From Macrostomum lignano (lineage: Eukaryota), in assembly GCA_002269645.1 (NCBI GenBank), contig NIVC01000542.1, positions 62,001 to 126,000 of the forward strand: DNA of 64,000 bases. The letters run 5' to 3'. Shown piece by piece: positions 2,569 through 61,175 of the stretch. A program made the position numbers and the translations under genes. Under the pieces are notes generated by a model, which saw nothing but the letters and a program-made list of their open reading frames with translations, ran no database searches and was not told the origin of the DNA. Each line of letters starts with the position of its first letter. Position 1 is the first letter of the stretch.

Positions 2569-13396
<10,828 letters not shown>

Positions 13397-14420: not shown

Positions 14421-14913
14421 AGTTGCTTACGAGCTACATGCATTGCAGGCAGACGCTCACACTGGGTGTACGATCGTAGTGCCCCTGAGTGTCTATCAGC
14501 AGGAATGCACTCTCCGTGCCCTAAGGTCTGGTCCTCTAGTCGTGAATCGCTGGACTCTGGAGCACGAGCCCCCTGATTTGTGTTGCATCGTGCAGAATCG
14601 ATCCAAAGACATCCCGTGAGATGCAGCTCCCCGCAGTTCTGCTCCTGTTCATGAGGATCAAAACATTGTTGGAAGCTTCAACCTTTTCATTGTACTTTAA
14701 AACCTCTTCAGTACGCAAGCAACCGAACAATTTCATGTCTCGAGCGGGCTGCCTCGGCCACAGACATTTCGCAGCGAGTTGCAGATCAGGTTGATTCTTT
14801 CTCTCATTGATATTTCATGCTCACAAGAGGATTCGAAGTACTCACAAAAGTGTCACAAAGGCTGGCAAATAAGATATCGAATCTCGGATTGCTCGAACCG
14901 CCGCCCGATCCTC

Positions 14914-16885
14914 ATGTCCGACTTGTGGAGTGGCCGGTCCCGCGGCCTGCCACGGCCGGACGTGAACGCGCCGGAGCGCGAGGCCTTTCGCACCGAGGAC
15001 GCCAGCTCGTCCACCCTGGAAGCCGACTGTTTCAACCCGGGCGGAGCGGCAGTGCAGTGCGGCACCGACCTGTTCCGGCTGTACATGCGGCACAAAATCG
15101 TGGACGCCAACCTCAGCCTGAACCACTGCAGCTACCGACTGAGCGTACTTGAGCAGCTCGCCAAGCACAAGCTGCGCTACCTCAAACAGCTCGAGACCGT
15201 CGCTGAGAAGCTCGAGGACTCGCCAAGGTACGTGGCGCTGGTGCAGTCCGTTTTGGGCCGCCAGATGGTCCGCATCAAGCTCGGCAGCGAGAGCTTCGTG
15301 GTGACGCTCAGAGAGCGGCTTCCGCTGGCTGACAAAATTCGGCCCAACTGCAAAGTGGGCATCCGGTTCACCCCGACCGGCGGCATGGAGATCTACCGGG
15401 TGTTCCCAGATGTCCAGGACCCGCTGGTGGCGCTGATGCTGGTGCAGAAGGACACGGAGTCCACCTACGAGATGATCGGCGGCCTGGAACGGCAGATTCG
15501 TGAGATCAAGGAGGTCGTTGAACTGCCCATCCTGCACCCGGAGCTATTCACCTCGCTGGGCATCTCGCAGCCGAAGGGCGTGCTGCTGTACGGGCCGCCG
15601 GGCACCGGCAAGACCATGCTGGCCAGGGCGGTGGCCCACCACACCAAGTGCGCCTTCTTCAAGCTGTCGGGCACCGAGCTGGTGCAGAAGTACATCGGCG
15701 AAGGCGCCCGCCTCATGCGGGAGCTGTTCATCCTGGCCAGACAGAAGGCGCCGTCCATCATCTTCTTGGACGAGGTGGACAGCATCGGCACCAAGCGGTC
15801 GGACGGTGGCGGCGGCAGCCACAGCAGCGGAGGAGGCTCGTCCTGCGAGCGCACGATGATTGAGCTGCTCAACCAGGTGGACGGCTTTGAGCCGGCTGAG
15901 AATATCAAGGTTGGCGCTCTCTACCTGTGCTTAGTTGAGGACTCTGGTGAAAGAAAGCTCTCAGCACAGCACCTGAGACAGTTCTCAGCACAGTCCATGA
16001 GACAGTTCTCAGCACAGCACCTGAGACAGTTCTCAGCACAACCCTGAGACAGTTCTCAGCACAGCCCTGAGACAGTTCTCAGCACAGCCCCTGAGACAGT
16101 TCTCAGCACAGCCCTGAGACAGTTCTCAGCACAGTCCCTGAGACAGTTCTTAGCACAGTCCTTGAGACAGTTCTCAGCACAGTCCCTGAGACAGTTCTCA
16201 GCACAGTCCATGAGACAGTTCTCAGCACAGTCCAGGAGACAGTTCTCAGCACAGCACCTGAGACAGTTCTCAGCACAGTCCAGGAGACAGTTCTTAGCAC
16301 AGTCCCTGAGACAGTTCTTAGCACAGTCCCTGAGACAGTCATCTATGGTATTCATTAAGTTTATTTGTAAACACTCGTAGTCTACCTGAGACAGTCAGTA
16401 AGACTAATACAGTACTCAAGACTGTCCCTAAAACAGTTCTAAAGGGACAGTCGTAAGCCAGTCGTAAAGACATTTTTTCTACCTAAGACGCAACTTCAAA
16501 GCCGTCCTTAGCCACCGGCTCGCACCTGATCCCCGCCCAGGTGATCCTGGCCACCAACCGCATCGACACCCTGGACGAAGCCCTGATCCGGCCAGGCCGG
16601 GTGGACCGCAAGATTTTCTTCCCGCCGCCCAACCTGGACGGCCGGGTTGACATTCTGCGCATCCACTCCCGACGGATGAACCTCGGGCGCGGCGTCTGTC
16701 TCCGCGCCGTGGCCGAGCGAATGCACGGAGCGTCGGGCGCCGAGCTGAAGCTCATCTGCCAGGAGGCCGCGTTCTCGGCGCTGCGCGAGGGCCGCCAGTT
16801 CGTGACGCAGGAGGACTTCCTGCAGCGAATCGATAAGGTGATGAAGAGTCTGAGCGCCAGAGACGAGTACCAGCACACCAAGTGA
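14914..16885 (+). CDS. PSMC5: 26S proteasome AAA-ATPase regulatory subunit 8 (Rpt6/PSMC5)-like, divergent paralogue, about 446 aa, 2 exons
   Basis: Exons 14914-15909 and 16541-16885 (NIK|VILATNR, phase 0). Rpt6-diagnostic [20 protein letters not shown] and LARAVAHHT. Walker A GPPGTGKT, Walker B IIFLDEVD, Arg finger [11 protein letters not shown], and [16 protein letters not shown]. The start Met is inferred as the first ATG of the GC3-rich region. Confidence 0.9.
15958..16340. repeat. 24-bp minisatellite (tctcagcacagtccctgagacagt)
   Basis: About 16 copies in the Rpt6-like intron; the unit has an internal tctcag/ctgaga inverted repeat. Confidence 0.92.
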
Positions 16886-17099: not shown

Positions 17100-19352
17100 T
17101 GGAATGGTCATTTGTGCTGTCATCTCTGGCTAGCTGATGTCTCTGACAGTGGAATGGTGAATGTGCTGTCATCTCTGGCTAGCTGATGTCTCTGACAGTG
17201 GAATGGTGAATGTGCTGTCATCTCTGGCTAGCTGATGTCTCTGACAGTGGAATGGTGAATGTGCTGTAATCTCTGGCTAGCTGATGTCTCTGACAGTGGA
17301 ATAGTGTATTTGCTGTCATCTCTGGCTAGCTGATGTCTCTGACAGTGGAATGGTGAATGTGCTGTCATCTCTGGCTAGCTGATGTCTCTGACAGTGGAAT
17401 GGTGAATGTGCTGTCATCTCTGGCTAGCTGATGTCTCTGACAGTGGAATGGTGTATTTGCTGTCATCTCTGGCTAGCTGATGTCATCTGACAGTGGAATG
17501 GTGAATGTGCTGTCATCTCTGGCTAGCTGATGTCTCTGACAGTGGAATGGTGAATGTGCTGTCATCTCTGGCTAGCTGATGTCTCTGACAGTGGAATGGT
17601 GTATTTGCTGTCATCTCTGGCTAGCTGATGTCTCTGACAGTGGAATGGTGAATGTGCTGTCATCTCTGGCTAGCTGATGTCTCTGACAGTGGAATGGTGA
17701 ATGTGCTGTCATCTCTGGCTAGCTGATGTCTCTGACAGTGGAATGGTGAATGTGCTGTCATCTCTGGCTAGCTGATGTCTCTGACAGTGGAATGGTGAAT
17801 GTGCTGTCATCTCTGGCTAGCTGATGTCTCTGACAGTGGAATGGTGAATGTGCTGTCATCTCTGGCTAGCTGATGTCTCTGACAGTGGAATGGTGTATTT
17901 GCTGTCATCTCTGGCTAGCTGATGTCTCTGACAGTGGAATGGTGTATTTGCTGTCATCTCTGGCTAGCTGATGTCATCTGACAGTGGAATGGTGTATTTG
18001 CTGTCATCTCTGGCTAGCTGATGTCATCTGACAGTGGAATGGTGAATGTGCTGTCATCTCTGGCTAGCTGATGTCTCTGACAGTGGAATGGTGTATGTGC
18101 TGTCATCTCTGGCTAGCTGATGTCTCTGACAGTGGAATGGTGTATGTGCTGTCATCTCTGGCTAGCTGATGTCATCTGACAGTGGAATGGTGAATGTGCT
18201 GTCATCTCTGGCTAGCTGATGTCATCTGACAGTGGAATGGTGAATGTGCTGTCATCTCTGGCTAGCTGATATAATCTGACAGTGGAATGGTGAATGTGCT
18301 GTCATCTCTGGCTAGCTGATGTCTCTGACAGTGGAATTGTCCTTGTGCTGTCATCTCTGGCTAGCTGATGTCATCTGACAGTGGAATGGTGAATGTGCTG
18401 TCATCTCTGGCTAGCTGATGTCTCTGACAGTGGAATTGTCCTCGTGCTGTCATCTCTGGCTAGCTGATGTCTCTGACAGTGGAATTGTCCTTGTGCTGTA
18501 ATCTCTAGCTAGCTGATGTCATCTGACAGTGGAATGGTGAATGTGCTGTTATCTCTGGCTAGCTGATGTCTCTGACAGTGAAATTGTCCTTGTGCTGTCA
18601 TCTCTGGCTAGCTGATATAATCTGACAGTAGAATTGTCCTTGTGCTGTCATCTCTGGCTAGCTGATGTCTCTGACAGTGGAATGGTGTATGTGCTGTCAT
18701 CTCTGGCTAGCTGATGTCATCTGACAGTGGAATGGTGTATTTGCTGCCATCTCTGGCTAGCTGATGTCATCTGACAGTGGAATGGTGAATGTGCTGTCAT
18801 CTCTGGCTAGCTGATGTCATCTGACAGTGGAATGGTGAATGTGCTGTCATCTCTGGCTAGCTGATGTCATCTGACAGTGGAATGGTGAATGTGCTGTCAT
18901 CTCTGGCTAGCTGATGTCATCTGACAGTGGAATGGTGAATGTGCTGTCATCTCTGGCTAGCTGATGTCTCTGACAGTGGAATTGTCCTTGTGCTGTCATC
19001 TCTGGCTAGCTGATGTCATCTGACAGTGGAATGGTGAATGTGCTGTCATCTCTGGCTAGCTGATATAATCTGACAGTGGAATTGTCCTTGTGCTGTAATC
19101 TCTGGCTAGCTGATGTCATCTGACAGTGGAATGGTGAATGTGCTGTCATCTCTGGCTAGCTGATGTCTCTGACAGTGGAATAGTGTATTTGCTGTCATCT
19201 CTGGCTAGCTGATGTCATCTGACAGTGGAATGGTGAATGTGCTGTCATCTCTGGCTAGCTGATGTCATCTGACAGTGGAATGGTGAATGTGCTGTCATCT
19301 CTGGCTAGCTGATGTCTCTGACAGTGGAATGGTGTATGTGCTGTCATCTCTG
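17100..19352. repeat. 49-bp minisatellite (tgctgtcatctctggctagctgatgtctctgacagtggaatggtgaatg)
   Basis: About 46 copies over 2.25 kb, with a few interspersed variant blocks. Confidence 0.95.
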
Positions 19353-22329: not shown

Positions 22330-25300
22330 GGCAGGTCTGGCGCAACCTCAGCAGTCAGGCAGGCGCCGCCGCAACAGCATGCGCTCCTCCGCGGCCGGGC
22401 ACGACACGAACTCGAATCCGCTGCTCCGGATGTTTCAGACTCGGCGGCAGACGGGCAGCGCCGGGCAAGAGCTCGTTTGGAAAGTGTTTGAGGCTGTTCG
22501 GGCTGATGATGGAAAGGTGAGATCCTTTGGTCCTGCGTCCCTCTGGTCCTGCGTCCTCTGGTCCTGCGTCCCTCTGGTCCTGCGTCCCTCTGGTCCTGCG
22601 TCCCTCTGGTCCTGCGTCCCTCTGGTCCTGCGTCCCTCTGGTCCTGCGTCCCTCTGGTCCTGCGTCCCTCTGGTCCTGCGTCCCTCTGGTCCTGCGTCCC
22701 TCTGGTCCTGCGTCCCTCTGGTCCTGCGTCCCTCTGGTCCTGCGTCCCTCTGGTCCTGCGTCCCTCTGGTCCTGCGTCCCTCTGGTCCTGCGTCCCTCTG
22801 GTCCTGCGTCCCTCTGGTCCTGCTTCCCTCTATTCTGTACTTTATTTCTTCTTCAATACAACACACTTCCTCAGTCCTAGAGTTTCTGCAAAGTAAGCAA
22901 GGCAAAAGTCTCGAATAATCTATCATTCATTGCTTTGAGCTGCAGGATTCCCAGAGGTGGACGCTCTGCCTACGGTTTCCCTTCCCCTACAGAAGTAGCT
23001 TTGAGCTTCTGCTGAACGAGCCGAGCCGAAATCTTCTATCCAGCGGCTTTGCAAACCTCAGCGGTGACAAAAATCAATGCTAAACTAATTGAGTAGAAGT
23101 GAGTGAGAAGAAGAACCTCTTTCTCAAACCCGGCGGTGGGGGTTGCCCAGTGTGAGCAGCTGCTCAGGTGATCAATCAGCTGCGCTCGCTGTGAAAATTC
23201 AATCGCGTACGAGAAGAGACTTGGACGAGGGCTGAAAAAAACATTTAGAATGATGATGAAGAAGAGATTCTGGATCCGTGTCGCCTGCTTCCCCCAAGCC
23301 AGGTAAGCAGGTGCTCAATCACCGGTACAACTGGCCAACGGCTCTTCGTTCCCCGGGACTCATCTCGGCGCTGGCAGTTCATCTGAATTTTTCAGCAAAG
23401 CAAATCACGATTCAGAAATATGTTTTTTTGCCCTGACAGCGTCTTCAGGCTTGTCGCGATTCGGAATGGCAGGCCTTGAAATTGTCGATTGTCGACATGA
23501 AGTGCCATGTTGGGCATTGCTAATAAAAATTTGAATTCCGTTAACGGCAGAAGCGTTAAAGTTGAAATGAAAAAACATGGACAGCTGAAGTGGAAGGGTG
23601 CCAGACTAAATTTTCTTAAAACAACCTGCAGGCCGGTGAGGAACGCAAAGCTGTGGAAGGGTGCCAGACTCGATTTTCTTAGAAACAACCTGCAGGCCGG
23701 TGAGGAACGCAAAGTTTTGGAAGGGTGCCAGACTCGATTTTCTTAGAAACAACCTGGAGGCCGGTGAGGAACGCGTAGTTGTGGAAGGGTGCCAGACTCA
23801 ATTTTCTTAGAAACAACTTGGAGGCCGGTGAGGAACGCATAGTTGTGGAAGGGTGCCAGACTCGATTTTCTTAGAAACAACTTGGAGGCCGGTGAGGAAC
23901 GCAAAGTTGTGGAAGGGTGCCAGACTCGATTTTCTTAGAAACAACTTGGAGGCCGGTGAGGAACGCAAAGTTGTGAAAGGGTGCCAGACTCGCTGTTCTT
24001 AGTAATGGAGCTGGAGGCCGGTGAGGAGCTCGCAGTTGTGGACTTGTGTCTCGACATAGTTTGTCTATGGAAAAAGCTCATTTAGCGCTGTGCGTTCTCC
24101 AGCTAGAATGTGCGCTGTTAATGGATTAACTCGTATTGACGAATTAACCTTATTAACAGACTGTTGCCCTACACTGCACAAGAGCTTCATTTTGGATTCC
24201 TCATTTAGAATGAGGCCTGCCGGAACTCAAGAACCCGTCAGGGAGGAGGGAGTTGTCATGGGAGCGAATCTCGATGGGTGCTGAAAAAAAGCGCCTTTGC
24301 CGTCCCCGCCCCGTGCCAGGAAACAGCACGTGCTGCAGCTCACACGCGAGTCTCAATTCATCATCGATGACTCAAAAAAGCTGGGCGGGTGAAAATTCCA
24401 GAGACAGGGTGCATGGGAGGGAAAACAGACAGAGGGAGAGATAGCGAGGGGCCTATTGAGGAAAATTCCTAGCATTGAAGTCTGCGGACTGCGCGTCATC
24501 ACAAATGAAAGTGGGGCTTCGCCGCGAGAGGATCCCACCGACTGGGAAAATTGCTTTAAATAATTTTCCTGCGCACTCATGCCTTTCTTTTTCTATGCCG
24601 ACAGCGAACTGAAAGAGAAAAAGTCAATGTTCTTCTTTGCCTCTCCCCTTCTGTTCTGAATCCCCACTCATCTCTAATCTCCAATCTTCCCTCTCATAAC
24701 TACCCTCCCTAATCTCAGCAGTAAGTCTCAAGAATCTCTCCTCCCGAATCTCTCCTCCCGAATCTCCCCTCTCGAATCTGCCCTCCCGAATCTCCCCTCT
24801 CGAATCTGCCCTTCCGAATCTCCCCTCCCGAATCACCCCTTCCGAATCTCCCTTCTCGAATCTCCTTCCCGAATCTCCCTTCCAGAATCTCACTTCTCGA
24901 ATCTCCCTTCTCGAATCTCCCTTCCCGAATCTCCCTTCCAGAATCTCACTTCTCGAATCTCCCCTCTCGAATCTCCCCTCCCGAATCTCCCCTCCCGAAT
25001 CTCCCCTCCCGAATCTCCCCTCCCGAATCTCCCCTCCCGAATCTCCCCTCCCGAATCTCCCCTCCCGAATCTCCCCTCCCGAATCTCCCCTCCTGAGTCT
25101 CCCCTCCCGAATCTCCCCTCCCGAATCTCCCCTCCCGAATCTCCCCTCCCGAATCTCCCCTCCTGAGTCTCCCCTCCCGAATCTCCCCTCCCGAATCTCC
25201 CCTCCCGAATCTCCCCTCCTGAGTCTCCCCTCCCGAATTTCCCCTCCCGAATCTCCCCTCCCGAATCTCCCCTCCCGAATCTCCCCTCCCGAATCTCCCC

Positions 25301-28300
25301 TCCCGAATCTCCCCTCCTGAGTCTCCCCTCCCGAATCTCCCCTCCCGAATCTCCCTTCCGAATCTCCCTTCTCGAATCTCCCTTCCCGAATCTCCCTTCC
25401 AGAATCTCACTTCTCGAATCTCCCCTCTCGAATCTGCCCTTCCGAATCTCCCCTCCCGAATCTCCCTTCTCGAATCTCCCTTCCAGAATCTCCCTTCCAG
25501 AATCTCACTTCTCGAATCTCCCTTCCCGAATCTCCCTTCCAGAATCTCACTTCTCGAATCTCCCCTCTCGAATCTGCCCTTCCGAATCTCCCTTCCCGAA
25601 TCTCCCTTCTCGAATCTCCCTTCCCGAATCTCCCCTCTCGAATCTCCCTTCCCGAATCTCCCCTCCCGAATCTCCCCTCCCGAATCTCCCCTCCTGAATC
25701 TCCCTTCCGAATCTCCCTTCTCGAATCTCCCTTCCCGAATCTCCCTTCCAGAATCTCACTTCTCGAATCTCCCCTCTCGAATCTGCCCTTCCGAATCTCC
25801 CCTCCCGAATCTCCCCTCCCGAATCTCCCCTCCCGAATCTCCCCTCCCGAATCTCCCCTCCCGAATCTCCCCTCCCGAATCTCCCCTCCCGAATCTCCCT
25901 TCTCGAATCTCCCTTCCCGAATCTCCCCTCCCGAATCTCCCCTCCCGAATCTTCCCTCCCGAATCTCCCCTCCCGAATCTCCCTTCTCGAATCTCCCTTC
26001 CCGAATCTCCCTTCCAGAATCTCACTTCTCGAATCTCCCCTCTCGAATCTCCCTTCTCGAATCTCCCTTCCCGAATCTCCCCTCTCGAATCTCCCTTCCC
26101 GAATCTCCCCTCCGAATCTCCCTTCCCGAATCTCCCCTCCCGAATCTCCCCTCCTGAATCTCCCCTCCCGAATCTCCCCTCCTGAGTCTCCCCTCCCGAA
26201 TTTCCCTTCTCGAATCTCCCCTTCGAACTCCTAATTCTCGAATATCTTCTTCTCAAATTCCTTTCGCACAGTCTGCCTGCTGCGGAAATTGAAAATCTTA
26301 ATTTGACGAAGAGTCGAAGTCAGTCTTTTTTAACGAAACCCGACGATTTTGAAAACTCGAAGACAGACAGCAGGAGGGAGAGAGGGGACGCTCCGGAAGT
26401 GAGGGTCCGGCCCCCTGTCCGATCCGTTCCCTTCCGGTTCCGATGATCAATGCCGCCCAATGCCCCGACAGCCGCGGCACCGTCCGCTGCGAGCTGCTGA
26501 TCAAAGAGCTCAATCTGATTGGAGGTGATTAGTTGGCGGCCGGGTCTCATTAGGATGCCGCAGCTAATCTGATTCAGCCAGAGTTCCTGAGAGACGTGAC
26601 TGCCTCTGCCTCCCACTGCCTCTATTTTTACTCGCCCCTTTCACTTATCAACTGTGGGGCAGACACGGGGACAGACAAGTACATTTCCCCCCCCCCCCCA
26701 ACTCTGCTGCGCTCCCAGGGCGGCAATGAAATTCATGCGGCTCTGACAGGAGGCACGTAGGGATTCCCCTGCTGCCATCCGTCTGTAGCTTTAATGCCTC
26801 CCAAATGGGAAGTCGCAATTGATGCGGATGCCCAAAATCTGGCAGATTCTGTGAGAACTCAATCCTAGTTTTTCATATCCCCACCGGGTGTTGCTGCACT
26901 CCAGGAGGCCTCGCTGCTGCTGTTCGACAAGAAGATCGCCGACAAGCTGCACAAGCCCAAGCGAAAGGAAACTGTGTCGGAGATTCTGCGTCGCGAGGTT
27001 CGCTACCTGGAGCGGTTCAAGCACCCGAAACTGCTGCAGATCTGGCATCCAGCCGAGGACTGCAGGTGAGAGACAGCACCAGCTCACCTGCTATTGCGGG
27101 TGATAATAATTCTACTAAATACTGCTCGAAATTTGCAGCGACAGTCTGGGCTTCGCCACCGAGCCAATCTGGGGCAGCCTGGCCAATTTTCTTGGAAAGT
27201 GCGACCGAATTTCGTCGTCTGTGCCGGCCGAGATCAAGGTGAGGCTCTCTGCGCTGCCAAGGAAATTCAGCTGCGATGTACATTGAATAGTGGGGTGTCT
27301 GAGGGATAGAAATTCAGCTGCGATGTACATTGAATAGTGGGGTGTCTGAGGGATAGAAATTCAGCTGCGATGTACATTGAATAGTGGGGTGTCTGAGGGA
27401 TAGAAATTCAGCTGCGATGTACATTGAATAGTGGGGTGTCTGAGGGATAGAAATTCAGCTGCGATGTACATTGAATAGTGGGGTGTCTGAGGGATAGAAA
27501 TTCAGCTGCGATGTACATTGAATAGTGGGGTGTCTGAGGGATAGAAATTCAGCTGCGATGTACATTGAATAGTGGGGTGTCTGAGGGATAGAAATTCAGC
27601 TGCGATGTACATTGAATAGTGGGGTGTCTGAGGGATAGAAATTCAGCTGCGATGTACATTGAATAGTGGGGTGTCTGAGGGATAGAAATTCAGCTGCGAT
27701 GTACATTGAATATAACTGAGGTTGATGGCACGAAGGAGAGGAACTCAGCTGCAATGTACTTTTTCTATTGCTCGGAGTCTCTGACAAAAGAGGCCTAACT
27801 GGACCTGAGATACAAAATTATTGTTGAGAATCTAGCCCATTAAAAGCTTTTAGCATAACTGGCAGTAACAGTTATAGTGGAACACGAATTTGGAGCAAAA
27901 TGGAGCCAGCGCCGTACTACGTCTATATTTAACGAGCAGGGTTTCGGAGTCTGAGCACCAAAGATGAAGGACTATAACGCCTGCCAATCAAATAAAAAAG
28001 TACGACACGAGGCGTGCGCCACTCATTGTATCCGCGAGACGGATTCGCTGGGAGCTGATTGGGGATCTTGGCTGGTTATCCAGCGACCCCCATTTGTGTC
28101 TTTTTTCCGGGACAAGAGCGGTCGGGAGAGGGCATTCTAGGGCCATTGTGCCCCATCAGCATCTGTTCGCGATGGGAGTGGCGGGTAGAGCTAAAGTGCT
28201 CAGCCAGACAGAACCGCCCCGGGGCTGGCTTTACACAGACTTCCAAGACATTCTTTTTATTTTGGAAGACTGCAATGAATCGAAGCCGAAACCCTCCTTT

Positions 28301-45799: not shown

Positions 45800-47068
45800 A
45801 TTCATAGCGCTGCAGGTGGCAACTTGGCCTTGAAAGGAAGCGCACTACTAGCACAATACAGTACAAGGGGAATGCTGAGAGGATGATATATTTATACGCG
45901 CTGCTGACATGCCGAACATCTCGATAGATGTCGGTAACACTGCCGGCTTGTACGCGCTTATGCCAATGCGCGCTCACTCAGAGGATTTTCCCGCTGTGCT
46001 CCCCAGCTGATCCCAGCTGTAACCAACCTGTAGGCTGACCTAGCAAACACTGAATGTCAATCCAATGTGTTTTGTGGCGTACTTTATTCAGTGTGTTGAT
46101 AGTATCCGTGCAAGCGACCTGCTACCCACGCCTTCATCCCGCATGCTCAAAGCCCATCTCGAGTCTGGTTATGATTCATGCGTCTGGCAGCACGGGCCGG
46201 GCATTGTGCGTAAATCAAATTCCTTGCCCGTGGGGATCCCCACGGGGATTCTGGAGGCACCGAACTACTCGCGCCGCCAAAAAAGAATCTGGTGGATTAT
46301 TCTTCCGAATCTGTAATCCGCAGGTTAATCCGGCTGCTGCTCGAGAGGGCCGAGCTGGCGGGCCCGAAAATTTACCGCGTAGTCTTGCTCAATTTGGCCT
46401 CTTATCTGTCCGATTGTATCCATTGTGAGCCGTCCGCCGCAGTGCCTTTTGGCCCCGGGGCCTCGGCCTCGATCCGTCAGACTTAATCTGCTCCGACCCG
46501 CAGCTGTAATTGGCGACATGCCGATTCGAACTTCGCCCCACCCGCCTGCCCCGGAGTGAGCTGGCTCGGATTCCGGGCGACCCCGGGAATTAAGCTGTTC
46601 GCCTCCCTGCAATTTTGCGGACTGATTGAGCAATTTGTGCTCGGACCAGCAGAGCGGGGGCAATTAGGAAGATTTAACTGCCGGATAAACGGAGCGCCGG
46701 GACTTCGAAGTCTCAAGGCAAATAAAAAGCTAGACATCGGCTAAATTGTTATGCATGCGCAAACTTGAGTGATCAGCTCTCTGTGCGTGTAATTTTCCTG
46801 CAATTTTGCTCGCATACTGGAGAGGGGCAATCTCAGCAAGGACTTGGAGCCAGCGGTTTTCCAGATTGTGCTTAGAAACAAGCTGAAGTAATTGGAGAGT
46901 AAGAATATTTAGATTTCAACATTGAAAGCGATGTTCGAAAATATATCAGATAGTTAGTGTTAGTATGGACAGTCGGGCTTTGACGCGCTGCAGGTCCGCG
47001 CAACTGAGGTGACGGTCGCTGCTTTTGCTGGGTTCATTAGGACCCCGCTCAGGATTTGGCTGCTGGCC

Positions 47069-47533
47069 TTACTCAGAGTCCCGCTTCCAGTCGTACTGAC
47101 CCGGCGCGGCGAACCTCTTCTTCCAGTCGTATTGCCCTGGCGCGGCGAACCTCTTCCAGTCGTACTGACCCGGGGCGGCGAACCTCTTCTTCCAGTCGTA
47201 CTGACCCGGGGCGGCGAACCTCTTCTTCCAGTCGTACTGACCCGGGGCAGCGAACCTCTTCTTCCAGTCGTACTGACCCGGGGCAGCGAACCTCTTCTTC
47301 CAGTCGTACTGACCCGGGGCGGCGAACCTCTTCTTCCAGTCGTACTGACCCGGGGCAGCGAACCTCTTCTTCCAGTCGTACTGACCCGGGGCAGCGAACC
47401 TCTTCTTCCAGTCGTACTGACCCGGGGCAGCGAACCTCTTGTGCTCGACCTCCTCCGTCTTGGCCTTGCTTCCGTCGGCGACAGAGAGCAGCAGCGCCAT
47501 GGTGGCCACGGCCGTAGCGAGAGTCAAATGCAT
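47069..47533 (-). CDS. Neuropeptide/peptide-hormone precursor: signal peptide + 10 x FAAPGQYDW flanked by KR/KKR
   Basis: 154-aa ORF. Hydrophobic N-terminus MHLTLATAVATMALLLSVADG with an A-x-G cleavage site, acidic spacer, and ten identical nonapeptides separated by dibasic sites. Differences between units are synonymous, apart from in-frame loss of one Lys codon in two spacers. Confidence 0.85.
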   Translation of the reverse strand: MHLTLATAVATMALLLSVADGSKAKTEEVEHKRFAAPGQYDWKKRFAAPGQYDWKKRFAAPGQYDWKKRFAAPGQYDWKKRFAAPGQYDWKKRFAAPGQYDWKKRFAAPGQYDWKKRFAAPGQYDWKRFAAPGQYDWKKRFAAPGQYDWKRDSE

Positions 47534-48351
47534 TGCGGGCGATTCAGGTTCTCAGCAGTGCTCAATGTTTCTCAACGCAGTCGCAGGGGGATTTTGCCTG
47601 TTCTTGAGTTCGCTCGTATCGCTCCAGCAGCTCGTGCGCAGTTGAAAGTGAAAAAAGTGGCGCCTTAGAGGGGCTGTCAAGCCGTCTTAATAGCGGAGAG
47701 TCGGGGCCCAGAGCGCGGAGATCTTGGAGGGAGCAGTGCCCCCAGATCCCCAACCCGTCTCATGGGATATCCATCCCCACCACCCAGCCTCCCTGCCCAC
47801 CCAGCAGCCAATGACGCGGCGGAGAAGAAGGGAAAAGGAGTTTGCACTCGTGGACTGAAGCGCAACTTCATTGGCCTCATTGAATTCAGAGGCTGCTTTA
47901 GACGCATTCCAAATTTGGAGATTGCTTTTCAGGAAACTGCGCTGGCGCGGGCGGTCGCGTGGCTGCAAGCAGCATGGACTTTGTGGAGGGCCAATATTTT
48001 TTCTACCGGAAACAGAATCCGAGCTAGATGCTGGCGCCTTCGGCACTGCTCATACATGTAGCTGTGGGCACCCCGATGAGCTCGCCAAAAGCGTGCTCGA
48101 GGCGACACATTAGTTTATAGACCTTGAGGCACAAAATCTGTGTCAACCATAAGTAAAGCACCGTGCCTTTGCCAAAACAATATGTGTGCGCAGACTCACT
48201 GTAGTGAATTTTCAACCTGTTGTATTCCTCAATATTCTTTCAATCTCATTCGTGAATCCGGAATTCTAGCGTGACCTTAGTAACCTTTAGTTACTAAGCA
48301 ACACCAATCTTATTGTCAAACCACAGCCAATTCACTTTGATCTGATTTCAG

Positions 48352-48563
48352 GACCTGACCATCACCAAAAACAACAGCAACAGCAGCAACCGCAGCAGCA
48401 GAACCAGCAGCAGCAGCACCTGAGGTCATTTGCTGGATTCGTCAGCGGAGGTGGCATTGGGAGCGGCAGGATGTGCAAAACGGGCAGCAGTCCGACTTTC
48501 AACCTGCGCACAGCACCCAGGAAAGGCTCCGCCACCGACATCTACGGCGCCGGAGGCGGGACG
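48352..48563 (+). CDS. Probable internal exon (poly-Q, RKGSATDIY), likely SCYL2-like C-terminal tail
   Basis: TTTCAG acceptor and GTGAGT donor. Open only as phase 1 in / phase 0 out among the frames checked. Encodes PDHHQKQQQQ...FNLRTAPRKGSATDIYGAGGGT. Confidence 0.55.
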
Positions 48564-59891: not shown

Positions 59892-61175
59892 TTAGATGGC
59901 CACTTTCTTCTGGCTGGCCGGGTCTGCCGACTCCGCAGCAGCTGCCGTCGTCGCAGCCGCCACCGAAGCCTCCAGCGGCAGCTCGCGGGTGACGCCGCCC
60001 CACTCCAGGCGGAAGCGGCGGCCGCGCCACTCCACGCCGCGCTGGCACTGGGCGCAGAGGACGTTCAGCGGCGACATGCAGGCGCAGAGCAGCCAGGCGC
60101 AGACGAAGGCCAGGCGGCTGAACGGCGCGGGGCTCTCCATGCAGTTGAGCATGAGCAGGTAGTCGCAGAGCAGCCAGGCTAGACAGTGGATGAGGAAGTA
60201 GGCGTACACATTGACGCCGCTAGGCCAAAGGAAGGCGAGGGCCCAGGCGGCCATGAGGCCGCTGAGCAGGCAGTCTGAGAACGGCTCCAGCAGCACAACG
60301 TGGGGAATCATGGCCGAGCGCAGTTTAATCCAGCGAATGAGGCGGCGCCGCAGGTTGCCAACGGAGGTGCTGCCGTCCTGCAGGGCCGGGTAGTGGGACA
60401 GCACCACCCGGAAGCCGCGCGACCTCACGTACTGCGACAGGAAGAAATCCTCGGCCAGGTAGCGGCCAAAGTAGGCCAGGCCGCCGGGCAGCGGATCCAG
60501 GATGGACTTGCGGAACAGGCAGGACATGCCGGTGGTGCAGTTGATGCCGACCAGGTTAGCCGTGATGTACACCTTGGCGTGCGTGCCGCCGAAGTAGGCC
60601 GATTGGACAACATTGTGAAAGCCGGGCCGCTGCTCGGTGAACGGCATCTGGTGCACCATACCGACGTCGCGGCCCATGCAGCGAACCATGTCAGCGAGGG
60701 CCTGCGGCAGCATGCGGACGCCGCTGTCTGAGATGAGCAGCAAGTCGTACTTGGCGCACTCGAATCCCTGCATCATGTTGTTCACCTTGGGATTCACGCT
60801 GTGCTGCTTGGGAGATTTGAATACGCGCGCATCAACGTGGGGATATTTCTCCATCAGGGTGTCCACCACCATGCTGACAATGTCCTCGGAGCTTTCCAGG
60901 CAGAACAGCAGCTCGTAGCGCGGGTACTGCAGGGTGAAGTAGGTCTCCAGGTTGGCGTACACGTTCTTGTCGATGCCCACCAGCGGCTTGAGGATGGAGA
61001 CGCCGGGCAGGCGGTCGGCCTCCGGGTCCAGCGGCTCCAGCCGGCGGTAAAAGTACAGACGAGCCCACACGATGGCCACCAGGTGGAGGACGGCCAGGCC
61101 GGCCAGGAAGACAAGGGCGCCAACCGCCAGTGACAGCTGGGCCAGGTAGGCGTAGCTCAGCTGCAGCGGCAGCAT
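59892..61175 (-). CDS. UGCG: Ceramide glucosyltransferase (glucosylceramide synthase, GT21), 427 aa, no CDS intron
   Basis: N-terminal TM helix, then GVSILKPLVGID (D1), VNPKVNNM, LLISDSG (D2), VHQMPF, YFGGTH, TGMSCLFRK, YLAEDFF (D3), RLIRW ((Q/R)xxRW), and C-terminal hydrophobic segments with WRGRRF. Confidence 0.96.
   Translation of the reverse strand: MLPLQLSYAYLAQLSLAVGALVFLAGLAVLHLVAIVWARLYFYRRLEPLDPEADRLPGVSILKPLVGIDKNVYANLETYFTLQYPRYELLFCLESSEDIVSMVVDTLMEKYPHVDARVFKSPKQHSVNPKVNNMMQGFECAKYDLLLISDSGVRMLPQALADMVRCMGRDVGMVHQMPFTEQRPGFHNVVQSAYFGGTHAKVYITANLVGINCTTGMSCLFRKSILDPLPGGLAYFGRYLAEDFFLSQYVRSRGFRVVLSHYPALQDGSTSVGNLRRRLIRWIKLRSAMIPHVVLLEPFSDCLLSGLMAAWALAFLWPSGVNVYAYFLIHCLAWLLCDYLLMLNCMESPAPFSRLAFVCAWLLCACMSPLNVLCAQCQRGVEWRGRRFRLEWGGVTRELPLEASVAAATTAAAAESADPASQKKVAI

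What the first reader, a model, noticed from the sequence alone, without database searches (positions are those of the whole stretch)
47069..47533. Candidate novel neuropeptide precursor (10 x FAAPGQYDW) disguised as a 36-bp tandem repeat
Seen: a signal peptide (MHLTLATAVATMALLLSVADG|), an acidic spacer, then ten identical FAAPGQYDW peptides, each cut out by KR or KKR, and a short DSE tail. Unlike every other array in the window, the variation between units is confined to silent positions (Ala GCT/GCC, Ala GCC/GCG, Pro CCG/CCA, Gly GGT/GGG, Gln CAG/CAA, Arg AGG/CGG) plus in-frame loss of one spacer Lys. This is the signature of purifying selection on the peptide. Established: prohormone convertases cleave at KR and carboxypeptidase E trims basic residues. 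With no C-terminal Gly, the product should be a non-amidated nonapeptide, a class missed by amide-focused (RFamide etc.) mining. I do not recognise the PGQYDW motif from any named family; the resemblance to APGWamide is only superficial (inference). Repeat-masking would hide this gene.
Basis: partly seen in the sequence, partly recalled or inferred. Interest (0 to 1): 0.85.

Follow-up and report, generated by a model that had tools for sequence, protein, structure and literature searches.

The report
Flatworm multi-copy secreted peptide precursor gene
What looks like a 36-bp tandem repeat is a real, selectively conserved small gene in a Macrostomum-type flatworm that encodes a signal peptide followed by ten copies of the peptide FAAPGQYDW between protease cleavage sites; it is most likely the precursor of an undescribed, non-amidated neuropeptide or peptide hormone whose relatives are found only in Macrostomum lignano.

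Summary
Window 47069..47533 (-) is a complete 154-aa ORF with a hydrophobic leader, a short spacer, HKR, 10 identical FAAPGQYDW units separated by KKR (8) or KR (2), then DSE-stop. It is not a neutral minisatellite. All 5 variable nucleotide sites in the peptide codons are synonymous third positions (p~3e-4). It is the only one of ten period-3n arrays in the window with codon-phased variation. The locus is collinear over ~30 kb with Macrostomum lignano contigs that carry single-exon co-orthologs (8x FSAPGTYDW; FAQAGTYDW + 7x FVQPGTYDW), and a third paralog has FSAPQAFDW. Across these, only F1, P4, [YF]7-D8-W9 and the [KR]-K-R sites are conserved, often with different codons, while leader and spacer have diverged. 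This is the classic signature of a prohormone. The M. lignano gene models derive from RNA, so the family is transcribed. Exhaustive protein searches find it only in Macrostomum, no Pfam family matches, and no searchable paper mentions the motif or gene IDs. Neuronal expression, processing and receptor remain untested. Verdict: a real gene and a new family of a well-known kind (multi-copy neuropeptide-like precursor). It is a good lead for flatworm neurobiology but not a conceptual surprise.

The parts
47069..47533 (-). Complete single-exon CDS (154 aa + TAA stop) of the peptide precursor
   Evidence: an in-frame TGA 7 codons upstream bounds the start
47471..47533 (-). Predicted signal peptide, aa 1-21 MHLTLATAVATMALLLSVADG (cleavage after G21 or A19)
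   Evidence: Maximum 11-aa Kyte-Doolittle hydropathy 2.33 at aa 8-18. Small residues at -3/-1 (A-D-G|S or S-V-A|D) are read from the sequence. Co-orthologs have equivalent hydrophobic leaders of unrelated sequence. Heuristic only.
47435..47470 (-). Spacer SKAKTEEVEH plus the first KR cleavage site (aa 22-33)
   Evidence: The spacer is not conserved, but the KR directly before the first peptide is invariant in all four family members.
47081..47434 (-). Array of 10 x [FAAPGQYDW + KKR/KR] (aa 34-151); units 1-7 and 9 end KKR, units 8 and 10 end KR
   Evidence: all nucleotide variation is synonymous or an in-frame codon loss
47069..47080 (-). C-terminal tail DSE and stop codon
   Evidence: co-orthologs end in similar short acidic tails (SME, NEE)
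47686..47692 (-). TATA-like TATTAAG, 159 nt upstream of the ATG (possible core promoter; unverified)
   Evidence: Read from the sequence. It lies in the ~940-bp interval between this gene and a divergently oriented neighbour exon. Promoter regions of the three loci do not align.

Best explanation
This is a protein-coding gene for a small secreted pre-propeptide, most likely a neuropeptide or peptide-hormone precursor. Proposed mechanism: the N-terminal signal peptide takes the 154-aa product into the ER and is removed. In the regulated secretory pathway a prohormone convertase (PC2-type) cuts after each KR/KKR. A carboxypeptidase E-like enzyme trims the C-terminal Lys/Arg. This releases ten identical copies of FAAPGQYDW as a free-acid nonapeptide (no C-terminal Gly, so no amidation; calculated [M+H]+ 1054.463), plus a spacer peptide and a DSE tail. 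The peptide then acts on a cognate receptor, probably a GPCR. The determinants are F1, P4 and the C-terminal [Y/F]-D-W, which are what the family conserves. The multi-copy array arose and is kept uniform by tandem duplication and unequal exchange under purifying selection on the peptide. Shown: the ORF, its architecture, selection on the peptide and cleavage sites, orthology to transcribed M. lignano genes, and a nervous-system-expressed PC2 homolog in the lineage. Inferred: secretion, cleavage, trimming, neuronal expression and receptor action.
For: Architecture and bounded ORF. Within-array variation is only synonymous (5/5 sites, p~3e-4), and the same holds in the M. lignano paralog L001 (4 sites, 5 variants, all synonymous). 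It is the only codon-phased array of ten in the window. Orthology: the window minus strand is collinear with M. lignano contig NIVC01000415.1, covering the GT21 gene (68% nt), the peptide gene and six further blocks, and with the upstream part of NIVC01004175.1. The co-orthologs are single-exon ORFs with the same layout and 8 copies. Conservation is confined to F, P, [YF]DW and [KR]KR, with different codons between species (TTC/TTT, CCG/CCT, GGT/GGG/GGA, AGG/CGC). The leader and spacer share only M1 and the KR, and the KR before the first peptide is invariant although it lies outside the repeat. The peptide array is more conserved at nucleotide level (76% to L001) than the neighbouring enzyme gene (68%). 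The M. lignano GenBank models derive solely from RNA-seq and transcriptome evidence, so the co-orthologs are transcribed: (PMC5730564). A PC2 homolog in M. lignano shows an in situ pattern suggesting nervous-system-specific expression and is essential: (PMC4490696).
Against: There are no expression data for the window species and no tissue localisation for any family member. No peptide has been detected and no receptor is known. The signal peptide was judged heuristically only. No canonical AATAAA/ATTAAA lies within 470 nt downstream of the stop. All six frames but one are open across the array, so ORF openness alone means nothing; the case rests on phase-specific variation and cross-species conservation. 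Multi-copy dibasic-flanked peptides are also made by exocrine glands, so 'neuro' is not established. The family was not found outside Macrostomum, so there is no deep conservation to lean on.
Confidence: 0.75

Rival explanations
1. It is a secreted multi-copy peptide precursor made by exocrine or reproductive glands rather than neurons, for example a seminal-fluid or prostate peptide, pheromone or allohormone, or a mucus or defence peptide. Processing would be the same (furin/PC cleavage at KR) but the peptide would act outside the animal or on a mating partner.
For: The same architecture evidence fits equally well. Kexin/furin-processed repeat precursors are used for exocrine peptides and pheromones in other organisms (general knowledge). 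Lineage restriction is typical of reproductive and secretory genes.
Against: The M. lignano gene IDs were not found in the held supplements of the seminal-fluid screen, the adhesion study, the reproduction-related RNA-seq comparison or the germline/neoblast lists. This is weak, because files may be truncated or use other IDs. The peptide is highly conserved between diverged species, unlike the rapid evolution reported for reproduction-related Macrostomum genes (title and abstract of PMC7336406). The released peptide is small and anionic (pI ~4), unlike typical cationic defence peptides.
Confidence: 0.15
2. It is an unprocessed repetitive structural protein, such as an eggshell or adhesive precursor, in which Tyr and Lys in each repeat serve in quinone or DOPA cross-linking and the KKR motifs are not cleavage sites.
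For: The protein is secreted-type, repetitive and has Tyr, Gly and Lys in every unit. Flatworm eggshell and adhesive proteins are repetitive and rich in Tyr/Lys/Gly (general knowledge). Macrostomum adhesive proteins are repeat-rich (PMC6410801, listed).
Against: P1 is Arg at every site, the one exception being the terminal KKK of L001, and P2 is always Lys, while the third basic residue varies or is lost (KKR/RKR/KR). This fits a convertase site, not a need for Lys as such. A KR is conserved at the spacer/first-peptide boundary outside the repeat. Tyr is replaced by Phe in one paralog (FSAPQAFDW), which a DOPA role would not tolerate. The protein is very small (133-154 aa). The IDs were not found in the adhesion study supplements.
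Confidence: 0.05
3. It is a non-coding minisatellite that happens to be open in frame, one of the many in this repeat-rich genome.
For: The window holds dozens of minisatellites. Many give long spurious ORFs. Five of six frames are open across this array.
Against: Variation is confined to one codon phase and is wholly synonymous. Length changes are in-frame. The unit is conserved at the protein level with changed codons in syntenic M. lignano loci that are otherwise only ~68% identical in coding exons. The ATG, leader, stop and flanking KR are all conserved in position. The homologs are transcribed.
Confidence: 0.03

Closest known systems
Macrostomum lignano hypothetical proteins BOX15_Mlig001773g8 (PAA48327.1), BOX15_Mlig017890g3/g1 and Mlig030851g1 (PAA83548.1, PAA73271.1, PAA59548.1), and UniProt A0A1I8HD77 / A0A1I8IJ07
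   Same: True homologs with the same layout: leader, spacer, KR, [F-x-x-P-x-x-(Y/F)-D-W + (K/R)KR]n, short acidic tail. Two of the loci are syntenic with the window.
   Different: Different peptide variants (FSAPGTYDW, FVQPGTYDW/FAQAGTYDW, FSAPQAFDW against FAAPGQYDW). Eight genomic copies against ten. Unrelated leader and spacer sequences. None is functionally annotated, the database models are truncated or fused, and one carries the spurious automatic name 'Coat protein'.
Multi-copy invertebrate neuropeptide precursors in general (e.g. FMRFamide-type and the planarian spp/npp prohormones of Collins et al. 2010, PMC2953531)
   Same: Signal peptide, many identical or near-identical short peptides flanked by KR/KKR, and conservation restricted to the peptides and cleavage sites. 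PC2-dependent processing is documented in flatworms.
   Different: No sequence similarity to any of them. No [YF]DW motif was found in the planarian prohormone supplements or in a cestode npp set. There is no C-terminal Gly, so the product is a free acid rather than an amide.
APGWamide precursor (molluscs)
   Same: Multi-copy short peptide between KR sites; the window peptide contains A-P-G and ends in W.
   Different: APGWamide is a tetrapeptide with a Gly amidation donor. Here G and W are separated by three residues, there is no Gly before the basic site, and the APG tripeptide is not conserved in the paralogs (QPG, APQ). The resemblance is superficial.
Non-amidated multi-copy families: orcokinin/pedal peptide and achatin (GFGD/GFAD)
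   Same: They give free-acid peptides, are acidic, and occur as many copies between dibasic sites (general knowledge).
   Different: Different length and motif. Orcokinin/pedal peptides are 13-16 residues with an FD..GF core and achatin is a tetrapeptide. No profile or word-based similarity was detected.
P0020, a 114-aa ORF on an unidentified eukaryotic contig in environmental metagenomes (ENA ERZ23486787, ERZ27333047)
   Same: Leader, spacer, then 3 x DADFGFYDDF-KKR plus further KKKR sites; weak full-length profile match (E=1.9e-4).
   Different: The peptide differs (ends YDDF, not YDW), the organism is unknown, and the score may come from shared layout and KKR spacing rather than common descent.

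Membership tests
Classical multi-copy neuropeptide / prohormone precursor | N-terminal signal peptide | tested here: met
   Hydrophobic core aa 8-18 (KD 2.33) with small -3/-1 residues. All family members have an equivalent leader. Heuristic only; no SignalP was available.
Classical multi-copy neuropeptide / prohormone precursor | Repeated short peptides each flanked by mono- or dibasic convertase sites | tested here: met
   HKR|, 8 x KKR|, 2 x KR|. P1 Arg and P2 Lys are conserved in the paralogs, the one exception being the terminal KKK of L001.
Classical multi-copy neuropeptide / prohormone precursor | Selective constraint concentrated on the peptides and cleavage sites, not on the spacers | tested here: met
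   Synonymous-only variation within arrays. Invariant columns are F, P, D, W, K, R only, while leader and spacer are unalignable.
Classical multi-copy neuropeptide / prohormone precursor | Processing machinery present in the lineage | tested here: met
   Literature only: an M. lignano PC2 homolog is nervous-system expressed and essential (PMC4490696).
Classical multi-copy neuropeptide / prohormone precursor | Transcribed | tested here: inconclusive
   The M. lignano co-orthologs are RNA-derived gene models. No RNA data exist for the window species.
Classical multi-copy neuropeptide / prohormone precursor | Expression in neurons or endocrine cells; mature peptide detectable; cognate receptor | not testable with these tools
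   This needs in situ hybridisation or single-cell data, peptidomics and receptor assays. Supplement searches for the gene IDs returned nothing.
APGWamide family | APGW core followed by a Gly amidation donor and a basic site | tested here: not met
   The peptide ends ...YDW-K(K)R with no Gly, and APG is not conserved among the paralogs.
MIP / allatostatin-B, W(X6)Wamide | N-terminal and C-terminal Trp six residues apart, C-terminal amide | tested here: not met
   The spacing is F-x7-W, there is no N-terminal Trp and no Gly for amidation.
Any curated protein family (Pfam-A) | Score above the family's gathering threshold | tested here: not met
   The best hit scored 20.2 bits against a cutoff of 25.9 (YtkA, spurious); none passed.
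Neutral minisatellite | Variation independent of codon phase and no cross-species protein-level conservation | tested here: not met
   Phase distribution [5,0,0] against a spread in nine control arrays. The peptide is conserved with changed codons in syntenic M. lignano loci.

The most novel reading that the evidence does not exclude
F-x-x-P-x-x-[Y/F]-D-W peptides are a new, Macrostomum-restricted, non-amidated neuropeptide family with its own orphan receptor, unrelated to any bilaterian peptide family. The family may have been born and amplified from a coding minisatellite in a genome unusually prone to tandem-repeat expansion. The Y-D context could also carry a modification such as Tyr sulfation. 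Because M. lignano has RNAi and transgenesis, ligand, receptor and phenotype could all be tested directly.
Probability: 0.4. Interest if true: 0.55.

Novelty: new member of a known kind. Interest (0 to 1): 0.42.

Why it matters
If confirmed, this adds an undescribed peptide signalling family to a flatworm genus used as a model for regeneration, stem cells, ageing and sexual conflict. Non-amidated peptides are invisible to the amide-directed antibodies and motif searches that have shaped flatworm neuropeptide catalogues. It is also a concrete case of repeat handling damaging annotation. In M. lignano, two models have lost half their peptide copies, another is frame-disrupted, and one paralog is absent from GenBank and elsewhere fused into an unrelated model. 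Masking a period-36 array would remove the gene altogether. The practical lesson is that period-3n arrays with codon-phased variation should be rescued from repeat masks, and this applies well beyond this genome. The kind of gene itself is entirely familiar.

Tried and rejected
1. Literature searches for the peptide motifs (PGQYDW, GTYDW, QAFDW, YDWKKR, FDWKKR and others) and for gene IDs Mlig017890, Mlig001773 and Mlig030851 returned nothing relevant. The broad YDWK search gave only noise.

2. McVeigh et al. 2009 (PMC2749192) is not held, and Koziol et al. 2016 is a subscription paper I could not read. A prior mention there cannot be excluded, although Koziol's species set, as quoted in PMC11196405, contains no Macrostomum.

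3. No [YF]DW motifs were found in the supplements of Collins 2010 (planarian prohormones), in the Taenia crassiceps npp set, or in the S. mansoni neuropeptide paper.

4. Gene IDs were sought in the supplements of four M. lignano expression studies (reproduction-related RNA-seq, germline/neoblast, seminal-fluid screen, adhesion) and none was found. There is therefore no tissue evidence either way.

5. An exact-sequence lookup of the window protein in public assemblies found nothing on record.

6. Promoter alignment between the three loci showed no convincing conserved motif.

7. The conserved block ~1 kb upstream was tested as a possible 5' exon or enhancer of this gene. It turned out to be the first coding exon of a divergently oriented neighbour on the other strand.

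8. Considered and rejected: the plus-strand ORFs 47009..47668 and 47056..47517 as the real frame (variation phase and cross-species conservation fit only the minus frame); membership of the APGWamide, MIP or orcokinin families (defining features not met); and the idea that the window is M. lignano itself (only ~68% nt identity in the neighbouring GT21 coding sequence).

9. Structure prediction was not run, because it is uninformative for a cleaved repeat propeptide.

Full report
**1. What is in the sequence**

An ATG at 47533 opens a 154-codon frame ending in TAA at 47071..47069.
- The product is MHLTLATAVATMALLLSVADG-SKAKTEEVEH-KR, then ten identical FAAPGQYDW units, then DSE.
- Units 1-7 and 9 are followed by KKR; units 8 and 10 are followed by KR.
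- An in-frame TGA lies seven codons upstream (47554..47552), so the ATG is the first possible start.
- Tandem Repeats Finder reports the array as 47084..47440, period 36, 10.0 copies, 95% matches.

**2. Is it more than chance?**

The window is packed with minisatellites (75 TRF rows). Many of them give long meaningless ORFs, and five of the six frames are open across this array. An open frame alone is therefore worthless as evidence. Three things set this array apart.
- Silent-only variation. All five variable nucleotide positions inside the 27-nt peptide unit are third-codon, synonymous changes. Only 19.8% of random substitutions in that unit would be silent, giving about 3e-4 for five out of five. 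The other changes are AGG to CGG (Arg to Arg) and two in-frame losses of one AAG.
- A control against the other arrays. I aligned the units of ten arrays whose period is a multiple of three. This is the only one whose variable columns all fall in a single phase ([5,0,0]). The rest are spread, e.g. [3,4,4], [4,5,2], [7,7,3].
- Uniqueness in the window. A scan of all ATG-initiated ORFs for a hydrophobic leader plus at least three dibasic sites found this ORF and one non-repetitive ORF antisense to another gene.

**3. Origin and orthologs**

A protein search gave two hits, both Macrostomum lignano hypothetical proteins with the same layout: 4 x FSAPGTYDW, and FAQAGTYDW + 3 x FVQPGTYDW.

I fetched their genomic loci.
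- The window's minus strand is collinear with contig NIVC01000415.1 over about 30 kb. The blocks are a glycosyltransferase-21 gene (window 59892..61175, Pfam E=4e-47; 68% nt identity), the peptide gene, and six further blocks down to window ~30.7 kb.
- The window is also collinear with the upstream part of NIVC01004175.1.
- The window therefore comes from a macrostomid flatworm related to, but clearly diverged from, M. lignano. The two M. lignano genes are co-orthologs.

In the M. lignano genome both genes are uninterrupted single-exon ORFs with eight peptide copies. The deposited proteins lack exactly 144 nt, which is four units.

An exhaustive HMMER scan of 1.84 billion cluster representatives with a family profile found only M. 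lignano proteins as convincing hits.
- These include a third paralog group, FSAPQAFDW. It appears as UniProt A0A1I8HD77, auto-named 'Coat protein', and as A0A1I8IJ07, fused into a 1378-aa ankyrin-repeat model.
- A second word-indexed search with a four-member alignment again returned only M. lignano.
- No Pfam family reaches its threshold.

**4. Pattern of conservation**

Across the four family members the invariant columns are the initiator Met, the KR immediately before the first peptide, and, in every unit, F1, P4, D8, W9 and the K-R of the linker. The one exception is the first unit of the Mlig017890 gene, which has Ala at position 4. Position 7 is Y or F.
- Conserved residues often use different codons in different species: TTC/TTT, CCG/CCT, GGT/GGG/GGA, AGG/CGC.
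- Leaders and spacers cannot be aligned.
- The peptide array is more similar at nucleotide level (76% to L001) than the neighbouring enzyme gene (68%).
- The paralog in L001 shows the same synonymous-only variation within its array.
- Private variants sit in the edge units (units 9-10 here, unit 1 in both M. lignano genes), as expected for arrays homogenised by unequal exchange.

This is the textbook signature of a prohormone. Selection acts on the bioactive peptides and their cleavage sites, and the rest only has to be a signal peptide and a spacer.

**5. Mechanism (shown and inferred)**

Shown:
- the gene, its architecture, and purifying selection on the peptide and the basic sites;
- orthology to genes whose GenBank models were built exclusively from RNA evidence (Wudarski et al. 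2017, PMC5730564), so the family is transcribed in M. lignano;
- a PC2 homolog in M. lignano whose in situ pattern suggests nervous-system-specific expression and whose knock-down is lethal (Arbore et al. 2015, PMC4490696).

Inferred from established prohormone biology:
- signal-peptide removal (after G21 or A19);
- convertase cleavage after each KR/KKR and carboxypeptidase trimming;
- release of ten FAAPGQYDW free-acid nonapeptides ([M+H]+ 1054.463, pI about 4);
- action on a receptor.

There is no Gly before the basic sites, so the peptide is not amidated. The Y-D context could allow tyrosine sulfation, but that is speculation.

**6. Rivals**

- Exocrine or reproductive-gland peptide (seminal fluid, pheromone). 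This fits the architecture equally well and cannot be excluded without localisation. I give it about 0.15. Against it, the peptide is strongly conserved between diverged species, and the gene IDs are absent from the supplements I could search. That absence is weak evidence.
- Unprocessed Tyr/Lys-rich structural protein (eggshell or adhesive). Three observations argue against it: P1 Arg is invariant apart from the terminal KKK of L001, while the third basic residue is dispensable; a KR is conserved outside the repeat; and Tyr is replaced by Phe in one paralog.
- Neutral minisatellite. Sections 2-4 effectively refute this.

**7. Comparison with known families**

The gene works like any multi-copy invertebrate neuropeptide precursor, such as FMRFamide-type precursors or the planarian spp/npp genes of Collins et al. 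2010 (PMC2953531). By sequence it belongs to none of them.
- No [YF]DW motif occurs in the planarian prohormone supplements, a cestode npp set or an S. mansoni neuropeptide paper.
- APGWamide membership fails: there is no Gly donor, and APG is not conserved in the paralogs.
- MIP/W(X6)Wamide and orcokinin/pedal-peptide motifs are not met.
- A 114-aa ORF from an unidentified eukaryote in environmental metagenomes (3 x DADFGFYDDF-KKR) has the same layout and a weak profile match. It may be only analogous.

**8. Novelty and limits**

No paper in the searchable library mentions the motif or the gene IDs. However, McVeigh et al. 2009 and Koziol et al. 2016 could not be read here, and the public Macrostomum transcriptomes could not be searched. 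Homologs already exist in databases, but only as truncated, fused or misnamed hypothetical proteins.

I classify this as a new member (a new family) of a well-known kind. New lineage-restricted prohormones are found routinely in flatworms, so the surprise for a specialist is modest. The value lies in a testable orphan peptide system in a genetically tractable model, and in showing how repeat masking and short-read transcript collapse hide or mutilate such genes. The M. lignano pipeline explicitly dropped transcripts overlapping repeat annotations.

**9. Verdict**

- Observation: confirmed.
- Interpretation: supported as a candidate; the 'neuro' part is untested.
- Confidence that this is a processed, secreted multi-copy bioactive-peptide precursor of neuropeptide or peptide-hormone type: about 0.75.
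- Interest: 0.42.

Noticed in passing
L001 10001-10402 and L002 10001-10423 (M. lignano NIVC01004175.1, NIVC01000415.1): The deposited M. lignano proteins PAA48327.1 and PAA83548.1 have 4 peptide copies, but the genome encodes 8 in an uninterrupted ORF. Exactly 144 nt (4 x 36) are missing, which points to a false intron or a collapsed short-read transcript. PAA59548.1 (Mlig030851g1) is a frame-disrupted model of the same gene.
   Followed up: yes
UniProt A0A1I8HD77 (P0003) and A0A1I8IJ07 (P0004): A third M. lignano paralog group (FSAPQAFDW repeats) exists only in models derived from the older assembly. One is auto-named 'Coat protein' and the other is fused to a 1378-aa ankyrin-repeat model with an apparently translated intron inside the array. 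It is absent from the GenBank annotation, consistent with that pipeline's removal of repeat-overlapping transcripts.
   Followed up: partly
window 48471..48563 (+): A conserved first coding exon (MCKTGSSPTFNLRTAPRKGSATDIYGAGGGT, followed by a GTGAGT donor) belongs to a divergently oriented neighbour gene about 940 bp upstream of the peptide gene. It is conserved in both M. lignano loci (L001 7847-7921, L002 9101-9189). The gene's identity was not determined.
   Followed up: partly
window 7761..8384, 8501..9889, 10421..11026: Two exons of an EML-type (echinoderm microtubule-associated protein-like) beta-propeller gene on the + strand flank a 1.4-kb (ATGGG)n array of about 284 copies, which presumably lies in an intron.
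   Followed up: partly
whole window: The density of minisatellites is very high: 75 TRF rows and several dozen distinct arrays with periods of 4-182 bp. This agrees with the report that simple and tandem repeats make up 15% of the M. lignano genome (PMC5730564). Other genes present are a DCX-domain ORF (2569..3399 +), an AAA-ATPase exon (14779..16047 +) and a glycosyltransferase-21, ceramide glucosyltransferase-like gene (59892..61175 -).
   Followed up: partly
window 24732..26222; L002 ~18012-18769: A 14-bp satellite (GAATCTCCCCTCCC, ~107 copies) has a similar array in the M. lignano locus but off the collinear diagonal. The same satellite family therefore persists in both species near this locus.
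   Followed up: no
L003 6001-6345, L004 6001-6345 (ENA metagenome contigs): An unidentified eukaryote, on a contig next to a histone gene cluster, encodes a 114-aa precursor-like ORF: leader + 3 x DADFGFYDDF-KKR + DADFGFPEYEF-KKKR. This may be another undescribed non-amidated multi-copy peptide precursor.
   Followed up: partly
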